Assembly (NCBI GenBank): GCA_977020255.1
Contig: CDROCS010001117.1
Location: forward strand, 1-64,000
Direction: 5' to 3'
Length of the DNA stretch: 64,000 nt
Source of the DNA: Obrimoposthia wandeli
Taxonomy: Eukaryota
Part shown: positions 6,913-15,109 of the stretch, piece by piece
How positions within the stretch are numbered: the first letter of the stretch is position 1
Layout: each line of letters begins with the position of its first letter
The notes under the pieces: generated by a model
Databases searched by the model: none
Seen by the model: only the letters and a program-made list of their open reading frames with translations
What the model was told of the DNA's origin: nothing
Program-made: the position numbers and the translations under genes

Positions 6913-9138
6913 TTATTTAAACGCAGCTAATACATCATTAAAGCATTTCGAAGGTCGCATTATCTCAATTATCTTTTTAGAATCCGCTTTGTAGTAACCA
7001 CCGATATCAACGGAGTGCCATTGATCTGTTGTTAAGTCACTGACGATAGATGATTCATTTTCAGTTAATGATAGAGCCAATGGCGCAAAGTGCTTCTGAA
7101 GTTCAGTATCCTCAGTTTGCTCAGCTAACGCTTTTGCCCAGTATAGTGCTAGGTAAAAGTGACTGCCACGGTTATCAAGCTCGCCGGTTTTACGTGACGG
7201 AGATTTGCCATTTTCCAATAACTCAGCAGTTGCTTGATCTAATGTTTTTGCCAGCAGTTTTGCTTTAGCGCTGTCTTGTTTGATACCTAAATCTTCAAGA
7301 GAAGCACTTATCGCTAAGAACTCACCAAGAGAGTCCCAACGTAAATGATTTTCTTCTATCAACTGCTTAACATGCTTAGGTGCTGATCCGCCTGCCCCTG
7401 TTTCAAATAAACCGCCACCCGCCATTAATGGCACTATAGATAGCATTTTTGCGCTAGTGCCTAGCTCTAGAATTGGAAATAAATCGGTTAAGTAATCACG
7501 TAGAATATTGCCAGTCACAGAAATAGTGTCACCGCCGCGCAAAATACGCTCTAACGTATAACGCATCGCTCTTGTTTGTGACATTATTTGAATATCTACA
7601 CCTGTTAAATCATGATCTTTCAGGTATAGCTTAACTTTTTTAATTAATTCAGCCTCATGAGGACGGTATTCATCTAACCAGAATACTGCAGGGGTATTAG
7701 ATAACTTGGCACGGCTAACCGCTAATTTTACCCAATCTTGTATTGGTGCATCCTTAACTTGGCACATTCTCCAAATATCACCCTCTTCAACATCCATTGT
7801 TAATAAAACTTTGCCTTCATCATCAACAATGCGAATACAGCCTTCACCCTGTGCTTCGAACGTTTTGTCATGCGAGCCATACTCTTCTGCTTTTTGAGCC
7901 ATTAATCCAACATTTGGCACTGTCCCCATGGTTGCAGGATCAAAAGCCCCGTGAGTTTTACAAAAGTTGATGATCTCCTGATAAATTCTTGCAAAGGTAC
8001 TTTCAGGCATAACCGCTTTAGTATCTTTCAATTTACCATCAGGGCCCCACATTTTTCCGCCAGCTCTAATCATGGCAGGCATTGAAGCATCGACAATAAC
8101 TTCGTTCGGGGTATGTAAGTTTGAAATACCTTTAGCTGAGTCGACCATTGCTAATTCAGGACGTTTTTCATAACAAGCATGTAAGTCGGCTAATATTTCT
8201 TCACGCCAAGACTCAGGTAGTTGTTTTACTTTTTCATAAATACTGCTGACACCATCATTAGCATTAACCCCTAATTTTTCAAAGGTTTCAGCATGTTTAG
8301 CAAACAGATCTTTATAATAAACCTTTACCGCATGGCCAAAAACAATGGGATGCGATACTTTCATCATGGTGGCTTTAACATGGAAGGAAAACATCACCCC
8401 TGTTTCTCTTGCATCTTCCATTTCTTGCTCTAAGTATTCACACAAGATTTTTTTACTCATAAACATACTGTCAATGATTTCACCCGCTAGCAGTGAAGTT
8501 TTTGCTTTTAATACCGTTACGGCACCATCTTCTTTAGCAACAAACTCAATTTTCACATCACAGGCTTTATCCATCGTCATACATTTTTCACTGGCATAAA
8601 AATCGCCTGAATGCATGTGCGAAACATGGGTTCTTGATGCTTGGCTCCACTTCCCCATAGAATGTGGATTTTTTCTGGCAAAAGCTTTAACTGCTGGTGG
8701 AGCTCTACGGTCAGAATTGCCCTCACGAAGTACTGGATTTACCGCACTACCTAAGGTTTTTGAATATTTAGCTTCGTTATCTCTATCTTCATCTGTTTTT
8801 GGCGCTTCTGGATAATCAGGAATAGCATAACCTTGTGCTTGAAGTTCACTGATAACGTCTTTTAGTTGAGGAATTGAAGCACTGATATTGGGTAGTTTAA
8901 TAATATTAGTATCAGGGAGATGAGTTAAGGCACCTAGTTCAGCTAATGTATCAGGTACTTGTTGATCTGCGGGTAAGATATCGGAGAAGGCAGATAAAAC
9001 CCTAGACGCAAGAGATATATCTTTTAGTTCAATATCTATGTCTGCAGCTGCTGCAAAAGTTTTGATAATCGGCAGTAACGAGCAGGTCGCTAGCAGTGGT
9101 GCTTCATCGGTATAGGTGTAAATTATTTTTGAACTCAT
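6913..9138 (-). CDS. icd: Monomeric NADP-dependent isocitrate dehydrogenase
   Basis: 741 aa from MSSKIIYT; TDEAP, IIKLPNISAS, GSAVNPVLREGNSDRR and FETGAGGSAPKH motifs. Confidence 0.96.
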   Translation of the reverse strand: MSSKIIYTYTDEAPLLATCSLLPIIKTFAAAADIDIELKDISLASRVLSAFSDILPADQQVPDTLAELGALTHLPDTNIIKLPNISASIPQLKDVISELQAQGYAIPDYPEAPKTDEDRDNEAKYSKTLGSAVNPVLREGNSDRRAPPAVKAFARKNPHSMGKWSQASRTHVSHMHSGDFYASEKCMTMDKACDVKIEFVAKEDGAVTVLKAKTSLLAGEIIDSMFMSKKILCEYLEQEMEDARETGVMFSFHVKATMMKVSHPIVFGHAVKVYYKDLFAKHAETFEKLGVNANDGVSSIYEKVKQLPESWREEILADLHACYEKRPELAMVDSAKGISNLHTPNEVIVDASMPAMIRAGGKMWGPDGKLKDTKAVMPESTFARIYQEIINFCKTHGAFDPATMGTVPNVGLMAQKAEEYGSHDKTFEAQGEGCIRIVDDEGKVLLTMDVEEGDIWRMCQVKDAPIQDWVKLAVSRAKLSNTPAVFWLDEYRPHEAELIKKVKLYLKDHDLTGVDIQIMSQTRAMRYTLERILRGGDTISVTGNILRDYLTDLFPILELGTSAKMLSIVPLMAGGGLFETGAGGSAPKHVKQLIEENHLRWDSLGEFLAISASLEDLGIKQDSAKAKLLAKTLDQATAELLENGKSPSRKTGELDNRGSHFYLALYWAKALAEQTEDTELQKHFAPLALSLTENESSIVSDLTTDQWHSVDIGGYYKADSKKIIEIMRPSKCFNDVLAAFK

Positions 9139-9697
9139 ATTTGTAGCATCCTTTTTATTTAAATTAATTCCAACCGCAACAGTGTTATAACCTACAAGAA
9201 CATAATGCTTTTCCAAACAATCAGAAAAGGCCCATTATGATAAAGCGAGGCTAAACTTTTACTCTAGAAAAACGTTATAAGAAAATGTGTTTTAAGAAGA
9301 TTTATTAAAAATCAACTTGAGGTAATGAGTGCCGCTTAAATCTCGTTTCAGCCTTATTTTTTTAGTGCACAACAATTTTAAGAGAAAGTTAAAATCTCAA
9401 CGTACTATTGTATAGAAGAACGTCACTTGTTCAAATTAGACAAAAGTCCATTTTTTGTACTATTTTATTTCTCGAGGAGGGTTCAGTGAAGGTTATATTA
9501 GTTGAGCAAGTACACGCTGAATTTTATCTTCATCATACAAAAAAGCTTGGTGTACGCAACGTGAAATACAATGATAATACGGTGTACCAGCCAAGCTAAT
9601 CAGATGTTTTAGACGGTAAACATAAGAGAGCCCTTGAAATAAGATAATGCATTAACCTCAAGACAAGAACTAGATATACTTAAAAGCAATCAATACC

Positions 9698-10703: not shown

Positions 10704-11939
10704 TTATAAGTTTTCAATATTTAAGCTTTGACACCATTCACTAGCTTTTAAAAACTCTTCTTGTACCATTTTTTGATCTAAAGAGTATTGATGTAAGGTC
10801 TCATTTAAATTGCCATTGGTTGTTAAATCTTCATGGCCCAATATATAGCTAGTCGTTAAATCAAGTAATTGGCCAAGTAAACCCGCATGTTTAACTAACG
10901 CACTTTCAATAGGCTGAGCTAATGGCATTGTTTTAACTATTTCAGCCATAGGCATTGAAAGCATCACTTCAATAGCACTGAGCAACCCGGTAATAAAGGC
11001 AAAGTCACTCACTGATTTAAATACGCCTTTATCACTTAAAGCAAACATCATTTTACCTGTGATAAGTGCTTGTTTACATACTTCATCTGTCGTTTCAGAG
11101 GTTAAATTAGATAGGGCTAAAACAGAAACAAACTGCCTTAATTTATCTTCACCTAAATATGCTGCCGCTTGTTTTAATGATGTTATTTCGACTCTTGTGC
11201 CTGTTGCGACATTATTAACCATCTTTAATAAACCAACGGTTAAATTGACATCGTGACTTATTATTTCGGCCACCGTTTCATAATTAAGCGGATAATTAAA
11301 TGTCTCGCTTAATAGTTGTAACATCTGTGTTTTTATTGGTGCGAGTGCTTGGCCTGCTATTATTTCAGGCTGATGGTAAAAATAGCCTTGAAAATAGTTA
11401 AATCCAACTTCTACCAGTGTTTGTTTTTGGTTTTTTGTTTCTACTTTTTCAGCGGCTATAGCGACATTAAATAGCTTCATTCGTGTGACAGCAGGAAATA
11501 AACGCTTGGTGTTTATTTTTCCAATATCGACTTTAACTATATCAATGTAAGGAAACAACACATCCCAATGTGGTGCTAAATCATACTCAGTTAACGCAAT
11601 TTTATAACCTTTGTCGTAATAAAACTTTATGATTTTTAATAATTTCTTGGTAGGTTTTTCATGTCCTACCAATTCAATGACGATAGTGTCTTTATCAAAC
11701 ATTAATGGAAATTTATGAATTAATGAATTTTCAGTGAAATTAATAAAGGCTAATTTACCCATAGTAATCTTTTGAATATCACCATGAATATGGTTTTGAA
11801 TAATTAACTTGGAGCTGGCGACATCTTGTTCTATATCAGGGAATTTATTATCCAGACTATCTCTAAATAATAATTCATAGCCTATGGTTTCTAGTTTTTC
11901 ATTTAAGATAGCTTGTCTAGCTATATAAGTATTTTTCAT
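10704..11939 (-). CDS. EAL + HDOD domain protein (YuxH-like)
   Basis: YIARQAI...GYELLFR, AEKVET and FQGYFY in the EAL-like half; HDVNLTVGLLKMVN...ITSLKQAAAYLG in the HDOD half. Confidence 0.88.
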   Translation of the reverse strand: MKNTYIARQAILNEKLETIGYELLFRDSLDNKFPDIEQDVASSKLIIQNHIHGDIQKITMGKLAFINFTENSLIHKFPLMFDKDTIVIELVGHEKPTKKLLKIIKFYYDKGYKIALTEYDLAPHWDVLFPYIDIVKVDIGKINTKRLFPAVTRMKLFNVAIAAEKVETKNQKQTLVEVGFNYFQGYFYHQPEIIAGQALAPIKTQMLQLLSETFNYPLNYETVAEIISHDVNLTVGLLKMVNNVATGTRVEITSLKQAAAYLGEDKLRQFVSVLALSNLTSETTDEVCKQALITGKMMFALSDKGVFKSVSDFAFITGLLSAIEVMLSMPMAEIVKTMPLAQPIESALVKHAGLLGQLLDLTTSYILGHEDLTTNGNLNETLHQYSLDQKMVQEEFLKASEWCQSLNIENL

Positions 11940-12133
11940 TTTAATTTTGATTTTTGATAAACTACTTTGTAGCCAGATTAGCATTATCGAGTAAAAAAGC
12001 TAGCGTAATTTTGTCGATTAGCAACGGATAGAGTTCGAACAGTAATTGAAATAAAAATTTACAATTACTATCTTGAAATAATAAATTTATCACTCAATAT
12101 AGATATAAGTAGTCGTTTATTTTTGAGGAACGT

Positions 12134-12436
12134 GTGTATAAATTAATTTTTGCAATATTTATATTTTGTGCAACCAACTCACATGCTGAGTCGGTCTATA
12201 ATATTGCCGATGAAATAAGTTCTAACACCTCAAGCCACTTAATTTTTGATGCCTTAACTGAAATAGAAGTTGATTCAGAGCTAGAATTTGATTTATCAAT
12301 TGACAACATTGATCATAATAATCGAATTCTTCAATTAACCTATTTATCTCAGTACTCACACAACAATAACGTCCTATTATTAAATAATAAATTTCAGTAT
12401 TTACGCCCTAGAGCCCCTCCTTTTTTCATCATTTAA
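12134..12436 (+). CDS. Small secreted protein with C-terminal RAPP motif (candidate translation-arrest leader)
   Basis: Signal peptide MYKLIFAIFIFCATNSHA; ends RPRAPPFFII-stop, with the RAPP codons at 12410-12421. Confidence 0.7.
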   Translation: MYKLIFAIFIFCATNSHAESVYNIADEISSNTSSHLIFDALTEIEVDSELEFDLSIDNIDHNNRILQLTYLSQYSHNNNVLLLNNKFQYLRPRAPPFFII

Positions 12437-12513
12437 ATTTCACAACTATAATTACATCAATATTAGTATCTATTTTCGATGTAATGTCGCCAATTTTTCG
12501 TGGAGATTTACTT

Positions 12514-12828
12514 ATGATGGTTACAACCACTTTTCGTCATAAAACTCAGGATTGTCAATTGAAATCCTATGTTAATAAAATTGTAGAAAACCTTAGCTTT
12601 TATACTGATTTGATTAATTGCATACAAGTAACTTTTGAAGCTGATAGCTGTAGAAAAGGCAATGCTAAATATGGTTGCCATATCTCACTACACTTACTTG
12701 GCAAAAAAAATATCGATATAAAAGTAATTTGTAGATATGCAAAAGATGCATTCGATCAGGCATTTAATCAATTAAGTAACAAGTTAAAAAATTCAGTCAG
12801 ACATAAAAAAGGCATTGAAAATTCGTAG
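12514..12828 (+). CDS. HPF/RaiA-like (S30AE) protein, divergent
   Basis: Pattern LKSYVNKIVENL...IQVTFE...CHISLHL...KDAFDQAFNQLSNKL. GGAG RBS ahead of the ATG at 12514. Confidence 0.65.
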   Translation: MMVTTTFRHKTQDCQLKSYVNKIVENLSFYTDLINCIQVTFEADSCRKGNAKYGCHISLHLLGKKNIDIKVICRYAKDAFDQAFNQLSNKLKNSVRHKKGIENS

Positions 12829-12877
12829 TTGTTTTTCCGTTACACACAGATAAATTTTAACATTATCAGAGGTTATT

Positions 12878-13438
12878 ATGAAAAATTTACAATTATTTGA
12901 TTTAGATTTAATAGACAACATTATCTCACCAGAAGATTTTAATCAGACTTCTTTAATGTCTCCCGCAACAGATATTTTTACAGACTTTAAAAAGCATAAG
13001 GCATTAATTATTGAAGATGAAACTCCGGCCGGTGAAGCTTTAAAACTGATGGTAAAGACTCACGTTCGAATGAAAATTGTTATGTCAAAAGACAATGACT
13101 TTATGGGAATCATTAGCACGAAGGAATTAAACGAGCAGACAATAGTCACCGCTATTGCTAAAGGAAGTGAGCGACATGAAGTATTGGTGAGTGACTTAAT
13201 GGTGTTAAGAAGTGACTTACATGCATTTGATTTTAATGAATTAGAGACAGCTACAGTTAATGATGTTGTTAATGTTTTAGAAAATTATGGATTACGTCAT
13301 TGCTTAGTTTTAGATAGAGAACACCACCACATTCGAGGTGTAATCTCTTCAAGTGATATTGCGAGAAAGTTACATTTACCTATAGATATTTTTTCAAAAA
13401 CTTCATTTAGTCACGTGTTTAAAGTTATCCATGGATAG
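12878..13438 (+). CDS. CBS-pair domain protein
   Basis: Two CBS repeats (DNDFMGIIS; HHIRGVISSSDI); GAGG RBS. Confidence 0.85.
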   Translation: MKNLQLFDLDLIDNIISPEDFNQTSLMSPATDIFTDFKKHKALIIEDETPAGEALKLMVKTHVRMKIVMSKDNDFMGIISTKELNEQTIVTAIAKGSERHEVLVSDLMVLRSDLHAFDFNELETATVNDVVNVLENYGLRHCLVLDREHHHIRGVISSSDIARKLHLPIDIFSKTSFSHVFKVIHG

Positions 13439-13804: not shown

Positions 13805-15109
13805 ATGAAATTTTTAATGAAAGTATCTACGCTTATAGGGCTAACCCTATCTACTTTAGTCTCCACTCAAATATCAGCACAAACGCAGGTAATTCATGCA
13901 GGTGAAGTGTTAACCGTGCCTGGAAAAACGCCATTAACTAAACAAACCATTGTGATTGAAGATGGCGTTATTACCTCGCTGAAGTCAGGTTTTATTCCTG
14001 TAAATAAAATAGATAAACAAGCACAATTAATTGATTTATCTAAGAGCTTTGTTATGCCCGGTCTTATGGATATGCACGTGCACTTACAAGGTGAGTTAGG
14101 TCCTAAAAATGACAGTGAAAAACTTAGAATGTCAGATGCTGACAAATTAGTGAAAAGTGCTTACTTTGCTAAAAAAACCTTACTGGCTGGATTTACTACC
14201 GTAAGAGATTTGGGTGGCAGTCCTGAGCAGAGCTATGCGTTACGCGATGGTATTGCTAAAGGTTACTTACAAGGTCCAAGAATTATAGCAGCAGGTAGTA
14301 ATGTTGCTGTAACCGGCGGTCATGGCGACGTTGATGGCATGAACCCCGCTTTGTTAGAAATGCATACGGCTAAAACGGTGTGTGATGGTCCTTATGATTG
14401 TCGACGAGCGACCCGTCGTGCGATAAAGTTTGGTGCTGATGTTATTAAAATAACCTCTACAGGTGGTGTTTTATCAGACACTGACACAGGAACAGGTCAG
14501 CAAATGGCTGATGATGAACTAAGAGAAGTTATTGATTCTGCCCATGCATTAGGTAGAAAAGTAGCTAGTCATGCCCATGCCGCAGCAGGCATAAATGCAG
14601 CATTAAGAGCCGGTGTTGATAGCATTGAACATGGCAGTTATGCCAATGAAGAAAGCATTAAACTGTTCAAGAAAACAGGCGCTTACTTAGTGCCTACCTT
14701 GATGGCTGGCGATACCGTAGTTGCCTTAGCTAAAAATACTAACTTTATGTCGCCAGCGATTAGTGCCAAGGCCATTCGCGTGGGTGGCGATATGATCGAA
14801 AACTTTAAACGTTCATACAAGTCAGGGGTTAAAATAGCCTATGGCACTGACAGTGGTGTTTCTAAACATGGTGATAATGGTAAAGAAGCAGTGCTCATGT
14901 TTAACGCCGGCATGAAAGCTCAAGATATTTTAAAATCAGCAACAATCAATGCCGCTGACTTAATTGGTAAATCCGACTCGTTAGGCACAATAGAAGTAGG
15001 TAAAATAGCCGATATTATTGCCATGGATAATAGTCCATTAAAAGATATTAAAGAATTACTTGATGTTGATTTTGTTATGAAATCTGGTGTTATCGTTAAA
15101 CAGCAATAA
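13805..15109 (+). CDS. Secreted metal-dependent amidohydrolase (Xaa-Pro dipeptidase-like)
   Basis: Signal peptide; MPGLMDMHVH, carbamylation-site Lys in VIKIT, ASHAH, SIEHG and GTDSG motifs. Confidence 0.9.
   Translation: MKFLMKVSTLIGLTLSTLVSTQISAQTQVIHAGEVLTVPGKTPLTKQTIVIEDGVITSLKSGFIPVNKIDKQAQLIDLSKSFVMPGLMDMHVHLQGELGPKNDSEKLRMSDADKLVKSAYFAKKTLLAGFTTVRDLGGSPEQSYALRDGIAKGYLQGPRIIAAGSNVAVTGGHGDVDGMNPALLEMHTAKTVCDGPYDCRRATRRAIKFGADVIKITSTGGVLSDTDTGTGQQMADDELREVIDSAHALGRKVASHAHAAAGINAALRAGVDSIEHGSYANEESIKLFKKTGAYLVPTLMAGDTVVALAKNTNFMSPAISAKAIRVGGDMIENFKRSYKSGVKIAYGTDSGVSKHGDNGKEAVLMFNAGMKAQDILKSATINAADLIGKSDSLGTIEVGKIADIIAMDNSPLKDIKELLDVDFVMKSGVIVKQQ

What the first reader, a model, noticed from the sequence alone, without database searches (positions are those of the whole stretch)
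12134..13438. Secreted RAPP-motif leader ORF ahead of HPF-like and CBS genes: possible new arrest-peptide regulatory system
Seen: a 100-aa ORF with a Sec signal peptide, a low-complexity middle and RAPP four codons before the stop, followed 77 nt later by an HPF/RaiA-like gene and then a CBS-pair gene. An 8-bp hairpin (ATTACATC 12451-12458 / GATGTAAT 12478-12485) lies in the spacer. Known: RAPP/RAGP motifs behind a localisation signal define ribosome-stalling monitors (SecM, ApdA, ApdP, CruR/DUF2946) that control the downstream gene, which is usually protein-localisation machinery or a TonB-dependent receptor. Inference: here secretion-dependent stalling may control a ribosome-hibernation-like factor and a nucleotide-sensing CBS protein, an output I do not recognise as described.
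Basis: partly seen in the sequence, partly recalled or inferred. Interest (0 to 1): 0.72.

Follow-up and report, generated by a model that had tools for sequence, protein, structure and literature searches.

The report
Ribosome-stalling leader before CBS gene
A small secreted leader peptide in a marine Colwellia ends in RAPP, a motif known to stall ribosomes, and the RNA just after that motif pairs with the start site of the next gene; the leader-CBS pairing is conserved in over a hundred related bacteria and is listed but unstudied in a 2025 survey, while the extra hibernation-factor-like gene in this genome is a local addition.

Summary
The 100-aa ORF at 12134-12436 has a signal peptide and RAPP four codons before the stop. 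A divergent HPF-fold gene (12514-12828) and a CBS-pair gene (12878-13438) follow, and the 8-bp hairpin is real.

Of 133 related loci, 120 carry a ~91-142 aa signal-peptide ORF ending in RAPP, RGPP or RSPP directly upstream of the CBS gene. Only R, P and P are invariant across 59 leader clusters. Two further features are conserved:
- The predicted pairing partner of the downstream ribosome-binding site lies 0-29 nt after the Arg codon, whatever the spacer length.
- An acidic patch lies 37-48 residues upstream of Arg, the published ribosome-to-SecYEG distance.

Most likely this is a RAPP-type arrest leader that unmasks the next gene's start site. Stall release by Sec- and membrane-potential-driven pulling is inferred, not shown.

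The HPF-like gene is an insert in one Colwellia subclade; the conserved partner is the CBS gene. Fujiwara et al. 2025 (EMBO J) already list "CBS domain-containing protein" among genes downstream of RAPP/RGPP ORFs, without experiments or discussion.

The scan also noted a signal-peptide/RAPP ORF upstream of a CBS gene on another piece of this assembly (s1-208532).

The parts
12125..12136 (+). Shine-Dalgarno sequence (GAGGA, 12125-12129) and GTG start of the leader
   Evidence: Read from the sequence. Relatives start the same ORF with ATG or TTG.
12134..12436 (+). Leader ORF, 100 aa, a candidate RAPP-type arrest peptide
   Evidence: ORF list. No Pfam or NCBIfam family matches. Orthologous leaders occur in 120 of 133 loci. 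R93, P95 and P96 are the only invariant columns.
12134..12187 (+). Signal peptide (residues 1-18, predicted cleavage after S-H-A)
   Evidence: Read from the sequence. In 55 of 59 leader clusters an N-terminal 10-aa window has mean Kyte-Doolittle hydrophobicity of at least 2.0, and only 2 clusters have a second TM-like stretch. DeepTMHMM in Fujiwara 2025 calls a signal peptide in 257 of 266 leaders of the RAPP-upstream-of-CBS class.
12260..12313 (+). Acidic patch (E43-D60, eight D/E residues), 33-50 residues upstream of Arg93
   Evidence: Across 59 clusters, D/E make up 42-48% of positions 37-44 upstream of R, against about 5% elsewhere. The centre of the most acidic 8-mer is a median of 42 residues upstream (IQR 39.5-44.5).
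12410..12421 (+). RAPP codons (AGA GCC CCT CCT). The expected stall has Pro codon 12416-12418 in the P site and 12419-12421 in the A site.
   Evidence: Read from the sequence. The stall geometry of RAPP peptides comes from PMC10951233. Motif counts by cluster are RAPP 47, RGPP 10 and RSPP 2.
12426..12444 (+). Anti-RBS segment: the last leader codons, the stop codon (12434-12436) and 8 nt beyond
   Evidence: In both the MFE and the centroid fold it pairs with 12501-12520. The expected number of pairs is 8.4, against 1.7 +/- 1.6 in shuffles. The family-wide partner profile peaks at +12 to +23 nt from the R codon.
12451..12485 (+).
   Evidence: Two pairs carry compensatory changes (C-G to G-C, A-U to G-C), and 94% of cells are paired in 9 Colwellia sequences.
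12501..12520 (+). Ribosome-binding site of the HPF-like gene (GGAG at 12502-12505, ATG ATG at 12514-12519), sequestered by 12426-12444
12514..12828 (+). Divergent HPF/YfiA-fold gene, 104 aa, pI 9.4
   Evidence: Pfam PF02482 at 25.6 bits. The AlphaFold model has beta-alpha-beta-beta-beta-alpha topology and pLDDT 78. The top Foldseek hits are HPF, RaiA and pY, with TM 0.76-0.89 and rmsd about 2 A. The family is small, 16 clusters. It is the fourth PF02482 paralogue in the near-identical C. demingiae genome.
12878..13438 (+). Stand-alone CBS-pair (Bateman) gene, 186 aa; the conserved partner of the leader
   Evidence: PF00571 at 1e-12. Model pLDDT is 84. Foldseek returns only generic stand-alone CBS pairs. 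Homologues occur in 167 of 401 sampled genomes of the same GTDB family. G77, G154 and S157 are invariant and D160 nearly so.

Best explanation
The ORF at 12134-12436 is a RAPP-type regulatory arrest peptide that controls translation of the gene behind it.

Proposed sequence of events:
1. The leader is made with a Sec signal peptide.
2. [quoted passage not shown]
3. In the free mRNA, the leader's last codons, stop codon and the next few bases (12426-12444) pair with the Shine-Dalgarno sequence and start codon of the next gene (12501-12520).
4. A stalled ribosome covers or abuts this segment, so that start site opens for as long as the stall lasts.

In most relatives the gated gene is the CBS-pair gene. 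In this Colwellia clade a divergent HPF-fold gene has been inserted and its start site is the gated one. The CBS gene follows 49 nt later on what is presumably the same transcript.

Inferred, not shown: the stall is normally released by the pull of Sec translocation. At the stall, the conserved acidic patch sits about 40-50 residues from the peptidyl-transferase centre, which is at the SecYEG channel. There the membrane potential pulls outward on negative charges. Weak export or a de-energised membrane would therefore prolong the stall. That would switch on a cytoplasmic adenosyl-ligand-binding CBS protein and, in this genome, an HPF-like protein that may silence ribosomes.
For: Motif and leader conservation:
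- R-x-P-P is conserved with everything else divergent. 120 of 133 loci carry the leader, in 59 clusters below 45% identity, and only R, P and P are invariant.
- RAPP, RGPP and RSPP are exactly the arrest-competent or arrest-permissive variants, and they are strongly depleted from proteomes (PMC12992588).
- The stall geometry comes from cryo-EM of ApdA and ApdP (PMC10951233).
- 55 of 59 clusters have an N-terminal signal-type hydrophobic region.

mRNA architecture:
- In a partition-function profile over 59 clusters, the pairing partner of the downstream RBS is confined to +0 to +29 nt from the R codon (peak +12 to +23). It is close to zero elsewhere, for spacers of 46-330 nt.
- Duplex energy between this segment and the RBS is -9.9 kcal/mol, against -7.7 for control windows inside the leader (p = 2.6e-11).
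- Expected pairs are 6.0 against 2.65 in composition-preserving shuffles (p = 2e-8); in the window, 8.4 against 1.7.
- Masking the stalled-ribosome footprint raises RBS accessibility, whereas a control mask does not (p = 4e-5).
- In the Colwellia clade the tail residues change (FFII, FNIV, LNIV, LKIV) while the pairing bases stay the same.

Acidic patch:
- It sits at a fixed distance from the motif.
- 40-50 residues from the PTC is the SecYEG position in force-profile work (PMC7886326).
- Membrane potential releases SecM arrest most strongly through acidic stretches (Ismail 2015, as reviewed in PMC6028853).

Module autonomy: no neighbouring gene is conserved, so leader plus CBS is a self-contained module.
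Against: - No experiment or RNA/ribosome data exists for this class.
- The equilibrium simulation of a stalled ribosome opens the RBS only modestly: 0.35 to 0.42 on average, and 0.25 to 0.31 in the window.
- In the window the footprint reaches only to about 12431-12432. It therefore covers the helix over the AUG, but the SD-pairing helix (12434-12441) starts just beyond it.
- Anti-RBS helices show no covariation within the narrow Colwellia clade, where most pairs never vary.
- An anti-RBS at the end of an upstream ORF also fits ordinary translational coupling.
- 13 of 133 CBS loci lack the leader, and one lineage keeps HPF-like plus CBS without it. The output genes can therefore be expressed without this control.
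- In the window the CBS gene's own RBS is predicted to be unstructured, so its dependence on the leader is unclear here.
- The membrane-potential idea rests on geometry alone.
Confidence: 0.72

Rival explanations
1. The architecture is the same, but the leader senses a periplasmic ligand, as proposed for CruR and copper. The exported alternating D-x-D patch binds a divalent cation such as Ca2+ or Mg2+. Binding or folding generates the pull that releases the stall, so the CBS protein is induced when the cation is scarce.
For: The conserved patch often reads D-x-D-x-D. CruR is a precedent for ligand-dependent release (and the Discussion). CBS modules regulate Mg2+ transporters; an archaeal CorB CBS module is among the fold hits.
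Against: At the stall the patch is only about 39-50 residues from the PTC, so it is at or in the SecY channel and not yet in the periplasm. No transporter or metal gene is a conserved neighbour. The leaders have no conserved Cys or His, unlike the metal-class leaders listed in the 2025 survey.
Confidence: 0.1
2. There is a constitutive pause and ordinary translational coupling. Every ribosome that finishes the leader melts the anti-RBS helix. RAPP merely lengthens that moment and sets a fixed expression ratio. Nothing is sensed.
For: The anti-RBS spans the last codons and the stop, which any terminating ribosome also covers. The simulated opening by a stalled ribosome is modest.
Against: This does not explain why a signal peptide (55 of 59 clusters) and an acidic patch at a fixed 37-48-residue distance are conserved while all other residues drift. 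It also does not explain why a motif that is otherwise purged from proteomes is kept.
Confidence: 0.1
3. The stall acts mainly on transcription, not on initiation. A ribosome parked at the end of the leader blocks Rho loading on the long A+T-rich spacer, as with TnaC, and so allows read-through into the downstream genes.
For: Spacers reach 233-598 nt at 21-39% G+C with no conserved ORF in several lineages. In this window the CBS gene has an open RBS, so polarity would be a way to keep it under leader control.
Against: The sharp position-specific pairing between the post-RAPP segment and the RBS is not needed for a Rho mechanism. Many spacers are too short for one (minimum 19 nt, median 109). 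The scan found no intrinsic terminator. This reading may add to the main one and need not replace it.
Confidence: 0.06
4. The ORF encodes a genuine secreted peptide whose C-terminal RAPP works outside the cell, for example as a processing or binding motif. Its position next to the CBS gene has no regulatory meaning.
For: It has a signal peptide and is a stable ORF of conserved length.
Against: The mature part is unconserved apart from charge pattern and spacing (18% mean identity). The pairing with one cytoplasmic gene is kept across several families of Gammaproteobacteria. The RNA complementarity to the next RBS is position-specific.
Confidence: 0.02

Closest known systems
RAPP/RGPP small ORFs upstream of 'CBS domain-containing protein' genes in Fujiwara, Tsuji, Sakiyama, Niki and Chiba, EMBO J 2025 (PMC12992588), Fig. 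4A/B source data
   Same: This is the same class. The leaders are ~90-108 aa signal-peptide ORFs ending in RAPP or RGPP, directly upstream of ~190-aa CBS genes in marine Gammaproteobacteria. There are 266 RAPP and 87 RGPP cases, and 257 of the 266 are predicted to be secreted.
   Different: The paper only counts the class. Its text never mentions CBS, and no arrest assay, mRNA analysis or sensing model is given. The HPF-like insert, the anti-RBS position and the acidic-patch spacing are not in it.
ApdA / ApdP / ApcA (RAPP or RAPG arrest peptides; Sakiyama 2021, PMC7897499; Morici 2024, PMC10951233)
   Same: These have a C-terminal R-A-P-P core near the stop, an N-terminal localisation signal and a variable middle. 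[quoted passage not shown]
   Different: They lie upstream of protein-localisation genes and monitor the machinery they regulate. Here the output is a cytoplasmic CBS protein, plus an HPF-fold protein in this genome. There is no sequence homology outside the motif, and no assay has been done.
SecM-secA and VemP-secDF2 monitoring substrates
   Same: A secreted leader stalls, the pull of export releases the stall, and the stalled ribosome disrupts an mRNA helix that hides the downstream Shine-Dalgarno sequence.
   Different: The arrest sequences differ (SecM ends in RAGP; VemP is unrelated). No Pfam SecM match was found. The regulated gene is not a Sec component.
CruR (DUF2946) upstream of a TonB-dependent copper receptor (Roy et al. 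2022, as cited in PMC12992588)
   Same: This is an exported RAPP leader that regulates a gene outside the localisation pathways.
   Different: CruR-class leaders carry Cys/His metal sites (examples). The present leaders have none and do not match DUF2946 in Pfam.
HPF / YfiA (RaiA) / pY ribosome hibernation factors (PF02482)
   Same: The fold is the same, beta-alpha-beta-beta-beta-alpha, with TM 0.76-0.89 to V. cholerae HPF and others. The protein is basic (pI 9.4). NCBI names a member 'HPF/RaiA family'.
   Different: Identity to solved HPFs is 15-20%. There is no detectable pairwise similarity to the three canonical paralogues of the same genome. The family is restricted to a few Colwellia-like lineages and is always next to this CBS gene. 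Ribosome binding is untested.
Archaeal CBS-domain hibernation factors Dri / Hib / Sri (PMC13004131)
   Same: These are CBS-domain proteins that act on ribosomes. Here a CBS gene is coupled to an HPF-fold gene in two lineages that are 49% identical.
   Different: Those proteins have four tandem CBS domains, whereas this one is a single pair. The structural match to Dri is no better than to any other CBS pair (rank 30). This is an analogy only.

Membership tests
RAPP-type regulatory arrest peptides | R-A/G-P-P (or permissive RSPP) core within a few residues of the C-terminus | tested here: met
   RAPP lies 4 codons before the stop. The tail after PP is 1-10 residues, median 3, in 59 clusters. 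Motif counts are RAPP 47, RGPP 10 and RSPP 2.
RAPP-type regulatory arrest peptides | Core motif conserved while the N-terminal part diverges | tested here: met
   Only R93, P95 and P96 are invariant, and mean column identity is 18%.
RAPP-type regulatory arrest peptides | N-terminal signal peptide or TM segment | tested here: met
   The hydrophobicity test is met in 55 of 59 clusters. The published DeepTMHMM call for the class is 257 of 266. No dedicated signal-peptide predictor was run here.
RAPP-type regulatory arrest peptides | Elongation arrest at the motif shown by toeprint or peptidyl-tRNA accumulation | not testable with these tools
   This needs in vitro translation or ribosome profiling.
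RAPP-type regulatory arrest peptides | Stall-dependent control of the downstream gene, typically through an RBS-sequestering mRNA helix | tested here: met
   Met in silico only. The RBS partner is confined to +0 to +29 nt from the R codon. Shuffle and window controls support this. The stall-mask effect is modest.
Monitoring substrates of protein localisation (SecM, VemP, MifM, ApdA/P) | The downstream gene encodes the Sec/YidC component whose activity releases the stall | tested here: not met
   The downstream genes are an HPF-fold protein and a CBS pair. No Sec or YidC gene is a conserved neighbour.
CruR / DUF2946 | Match to the DUF2946 profile; conserved Cys/His metal site | tested here: not met
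   No Pfam or NCBIfam family matches at E up to 1. The alignment has no conserved Cys or His.
HPF/YfiA (PF02482) | Profile match above the curated cut-off | tested here: met
   25.6 bits against 23.7, which is marginal; 28.1 bits in six-frame search. The NCBIfam yfiA equivalog is not met, at 15.3 against 40.9.
HPF/YfiA (PF02482) | beta-alpha-beta-beta-beta-alpha fold | tested here: met
   The model has pLDDT 78. The top 29 Foldseek hits are all HPF, YfiA, pY or RafH.
HPF/YfiA (PF02482) | Binds the 30S decoding region and silences ribosomes | not testable with these tools
   Only a basic pI of 9.4 is known.
CBS pair (Bateman module, PF00571) | Two CBS motifs forming a pair, with the G-h-h-S/T-x-x-D ribose-phosphate motif | tested here: met
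   PF00571 matches two stretches at 1e-12. The model and PDB matches agree. G77, G154 and S157 are invariant and D160 is at least 90% conserved. The ligand is unknown.

The most novel reading that the evidence does not exclude
These leaders are natural force or voltage gauges. A signal peptide, an acidic patch placed exactly at the SecY channel at the moment of the RAPP stall, and an anti-RBS tail together report membrane energisation or export capacity to the ribosome. The readout is a cytoplasmic adenylate-type sensor (the CBS pair) and, in Colwellia, a private HPF-fold ribosome silencer. This would be a direct translational link from membrane potential to ribosome hibernation.
Probability: 0.22. 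Interest if true: 0.85.

Novelty: new variant of a known kind. Interest (0 to 1): 0.6.

Why it matters
RAPP arrest peptides have been shown to work only upstream of Sec-pathway genes, a copper receptor and a handful of Streptomyces genes. The 2025 survey that listed hundreds of further cases asked three questions outright: whether arrest controls the downstream genes, how it does so, and where the releasing force comes from.

For the CBS class, which occurs in about 40% of sampled genomes of this GTDB family, the present analysis offers a concrete and testable answer to each:
- A position-locked anti-RBS segment inside or next to the stalled ribosome's footprint.
- A charge patch at the ribosome-to-translocon distance.
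- A natural variant in which the gated gene has the fold of a ribosome hibernation factor.

If confirmed, this would be the first arrest peptide whose output is a cytoplasmic nucleotide-sensing or ribosome-silencing protein. It might also be a native sensor of membrane potential.

Tried and rejected
- Relatives of G000 could not be searched, because the window lies in a 1.35-Gb multi-organism assembly with no relatives in the collection. I worked from the near-identical C. demingiae genome instead.
- Class-wide sampling was too sparse to be useful: 2 of 401 genomes.
- A sequence search of the HPF-like protein against PDB found nothing. Only the fold search settled its identity.
- The CBS fold search gave only generic CBS pairs, so no specific function could be assigned.
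- The search for a conserved neighbour was negative. The best cluster, a CitMHS/NhaD-like transporter, occurs in 16 of 133 loci.
- Long spacers hold no conserved ORF.
- Rfam gave no match.
- The promoter and terminator scan was uninformative: 14 promoter-like sites against 11.9 expected, and no terminator. A separate promoter for the downstream genes is therefore neither shown nor excluded.
- The stall-mask simulation gave a significant but small effect.
- Covariation in the anti-RBS helices cannot be judged within the narrow Colwellia clade.
- Ismail et al. 2015 is not held, so it is cited through a review.
- The metal-sensing reading was rejected for lack of Cys or His residues.
- Whether the acidic patch is specific to the CBS class was judged only by eye, on about 30 leaders of other classes.
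Full report
**What is in the window.**

The window is a Colwellia contig. Its proteins are 99% identical to those of C. demingiae ACAM 459. It lies inside a 1.35-Gb, 6912-contig assembly that also holds other marine bacteria.

The features on the + strand are:
- Leader ORF 12134-12436, 100 aa, with a GTG start preceded by GAGGA. It has the signal peptide MYKLIFAIFIFCATNSHA, an acidic middle, and then R93-A-P-P-F-F-I-I and a stop.
- After 77 nt, a 104-aa gene at 12514-12828.
- After a further 49 nt, a 186-aa gene at 12878-13438.

Pfam gives PF02482 (HPF/YfiA) at 25.6 bits against a cut-off of 23.7 for the second gene. It gives PF00571 (CBS) at 1e-12 for the third. The leader matches nothing. 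In six-frame translation of the whole 64 kb, the leader is the only ORF with an RxPP-type motif near its C-terminus.

**Conservation test.**

I collected 133 loci that encode a relative of the CBS protein at 31-99% identity. The family occurs in 167 of 401 sampled genomes of the GTDB family of C. demingiae. It is also found in Methylophaga, Methylophagaceae and Cocleimonas.

In 120 of the 133 loci, a same-strand ORF of ~91-142 aa lies directly upstream and ends in RAPP, RGPP or RSPP plus 1-10 residues.

The leaders fall into 59 clusters below 45% identity:
- In an alignment of 44 representatives, only R, P and P are invariant, and mean column identity is 18%.
- By cluster, the motif is RAPP 47 times, RGPP 10 times and RSPP twice. 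The residue before R is most often Ile.
- 55 of 59 clusters have a signal-type N-terminal hydrophobic region, and only 2 have a second TM-like stretch.

No flanking gene is conserved; the best flank cluster occurs in 16 of 133 loci. Leader plus CBS is therefore a self-contained module.

**The mRNA switch.**

In the window, both the MFE and the centroid folds pair two segments:
- 12426-12432 pairs with 12514-12520, which is the ATGATG start.
- 12434-12444 pairs with 12501-12510, which includes the GGAG Shine-Dalgarno sequence.

The family-wide evidence is as follows:
- I computed, for each locus, which bases pair with the downstream ribosome-binding site (-13 to +2), and aligned the profiles on the Arg codon. 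Over 59 clusters the partner is confined to +0 to +29 nt, with a peak at +12 to +23. It is essentially zero from -90 to -1 and from +36 to +180, although the spacers range from 46 to 330 nt.
- Duplex energy between this segment and the RBS is -9.9 kcal/mol, against -7.7 for five control windows inside the leader (Wilcoxon p = 2.6e-11).
- Shuffling the segment lowers the expected pairs from 6.0 to 2.65 (p = 2e-8). In the window the figures are 8.4 against 1.7 +/- 1.6, with 0 of 20 shuffles reaching the observed value.

[quoted passage not shown] That puts the P-site codon at +6. From general knowledge of toeprints, the leading edge of the ribosome then lies near +21. The anti-RBS segment is therefore in or at the edge of the stalled ribosome.

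Two cautions apply:
- Forcing that footprint to be single-stranded raises predicted RBS accessibility only from 0.35 to 0.42. A control mask gives 0.36 (p = 4e-5). In the window the change is 0.25 to 0.31.
- Within the Colwellia clade the anti-RBS helices hardly vary, so covariation cannot be judged. Only the inner hairpin shows two compensatory pairs.

One further point supports selection at the RNA level. In that clade the tail residues change (FFII, FNIV, LNIV, LKIV) while the pairing bases are kept.

**A molecular ruler in the leader.**

Measured back from the Arg residue:
- The signal-peptide core sits 77-88 residues upstream.
- D/E make up 42-48% of positions 37-44 and 19-24% of positions 45-52, against about 5% elsewhere.
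- Basic residues are depleted around the patch.
- The centre of the most acidic 8-mer is a median of 42 residues upstream (IQR 39.5-44.5).

In the window the patch is E43-D60. Counted from the P-site Pro, this is about 39-50 residues from the peptidyl-transferase centre.

Force-profile studies place the SecYEG translocon 40-50 residues from the PTC (PMC7886326). The membrane potential was shown to release SecM arrest, most strongly through acidic stretches (Ismail et al. 2015, cited through the review PMC6028853).

I infer that the stall is timed so that the acidic patch is in the channel. Export pull, helped by the membrane potential, then ends the stall. This step is inference only.

About 30 leaders of other classes in the 2025 list (TonB, copper, SecD and others) carry Cys/His motifs instead and show no such patch by eye. 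This was not quantified.

**The two output genes.**

*CBS protein.* It models well (pLDDT 84) as a plain Bateman pair with an N-terminal extension of ~35 residues and a C-terminal helix. PDB matches are generic stand-alone CBS pairs. G77, G154 and S157 are invariant and D160 nearly so, which fits the usual ribose-phosphate motif. An adenosyl-type ligand is therefore likely, but its identity is unknown.

*HPF-like protein.*
- It models as beta-alpha-beta-beta-beta-alpha (pLDDT 78).
- Its best PDB matches are all HPF, RaiA, pY or RafH, with TM 0.76-0.89 and rmsd about 2 A at 15-20% identity.
- It is basic, with pI 9.4.
- It is a fourth, very divergent paralogue beside three canonical ones in C. 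demingiae.
- Its family is small, with 16 clusters, and NCBI names one member 'HPF/RaiA family'.
- It occurs only between the leader and the CBS gene in a Colwellia subclade (window, L002, L004-L006, L026, L027, L030, L031).
- It is decayed or broken in L009/L028, L033 and L007.
- A 49%-identical relative sits next to the CBS gene without any leader in a metagenome contig.

In this window the gated RBS is therefore that of the HPF-like gene. The CBS gene's own RBS is predicted to be open. Its dependence on the leader here may run through the shared transcript or through polarity, and this is unresolved.

**What is already known.**

Fujiwara et al. (EMBO J, December 2025, PMC12992588) surveyed RAPP/RGPP small ORFs in 52,895 genomes. 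Their source data for Fig. 4A/B list 'CBS domain-containing protein' as a downstream class:
- RAPP 266 against AAPP 94, an 11-fold enrichment with p = 7e-106.
- RGPP 87 against AGPP 28.
- 257 of the 266 RAPP leaders are predicted to be secreted.
- Example entries are of exactly this type.

The main text never mentions CBS, hibernation factors or Colwellia. The Discussion leaves open whether and how arrest controls such genes, and where the pulling force comes from.

The leader-CBS pairing is therefore catalogued but uncharacterised. Within the library searched, I found no description of the anti-RBS position rule, the acidic ruler or the HPF-fold insert.

The scan itself noted a signal-peptide/RAPP ORF upstream of a CBS gene on another piece of this assembly (s1-208532). 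The assembly holds three copies of the CBS gene: C1117, C253 and C882.

**Verdict.**

- The arrest-peptide reading is well supported in silico (about 0.7) but entirely untested at the bench.
- The conserved partner is the CBS gene, and the HPF-like gene is a clade-specific addition.
- The system belongs to the RAPP-type arrest peptides. It does not meet the strict definition of a localisation-machinery monitoring substrate, and it is not DUF2946/CruR.
- I rate it a new variant of a known kind, of moderate-to-good interest, mainly because it turns open questions of the 2025 survey into specific experiments.

**Limits.**

- No dedicated signal-peptide predictor was available.
- The promoter and terminator scans were uninformative.

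Noticed in passing
whole window; G000 contigs C1117, C253, C882: The window is a bacterial (Colwellia) contig inside a 1.35-Gb, 6912-contig assembly that also holds other marine bacteria. A second Colwellia (C253:2221610-2222903) carries the same leader/HPF-like/CBS trio, with the leader 64% and the CBS protein 91% identical. A third CBS copy at 62% identity lies at C882:95123-95677.
   Followed up: partly
window 6913-9216 (-): A 767-aa ORF contains an internal RAPP (context DRRAPPAVK) 593 residues from its C-terminus. This is notable because the motif is reported to be purged from proteomes.
   Followed up: no
window 10704-11984 (-): The gene divergent from the leader is a 426-aa protein with an HDOD domain (PF08668, 2e-13) and an EAL match below the Pfam cut-off (24.2 against 31.3 bits). 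It may be a degenerate c-di-GMP phosphodiesterase-like regulator. It is the upstream neighbour only in close Colwellia relatives (8 loci).
   Followed up: no
L139:919-3419 (also L008, L010): A CitMHS/NhaD-like transporter gene lies upstream on the same strand in 10 loci. In L139 the order is transporter, HPF-like, CBS with no leader. In L008 (C. ponticola) the order is transporter then CBS, with neither leader nor HPF-like gene.
   Followed up: partly
L009/L028 spacer, L033:1036-1515, L007:3436-3950: The HPF-like gene is visibly decaying in some Colwellia. L009/L028 keep only remnants in a 306-nt spacer, and L033 has a lost start and in-frame stops. In the MAG L007 an in-frame stop splits the HPF-like gene and only the C-terminal part of the leader remains open, behind upstream stops, while the CBS gene is intact.
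   Followed up: partly
L013, L015, L023, L068, L069, L073, L075, L077, L078, L080: CBS-family copies without any leader. In Catenovulum these are second paralogues alongside a leader-bearing copy (for example G002 contigs C48 and C7).
   Followed up: no
window 13805-15109 (+): The gene downstream of the CBS gene is a secreted amidohydrolase (PF01979, 2e-52). It follows a 366-nt gap and is conserved as a neighbour in only 7 loci, so it is probably not part of the module.
   Followed up: no
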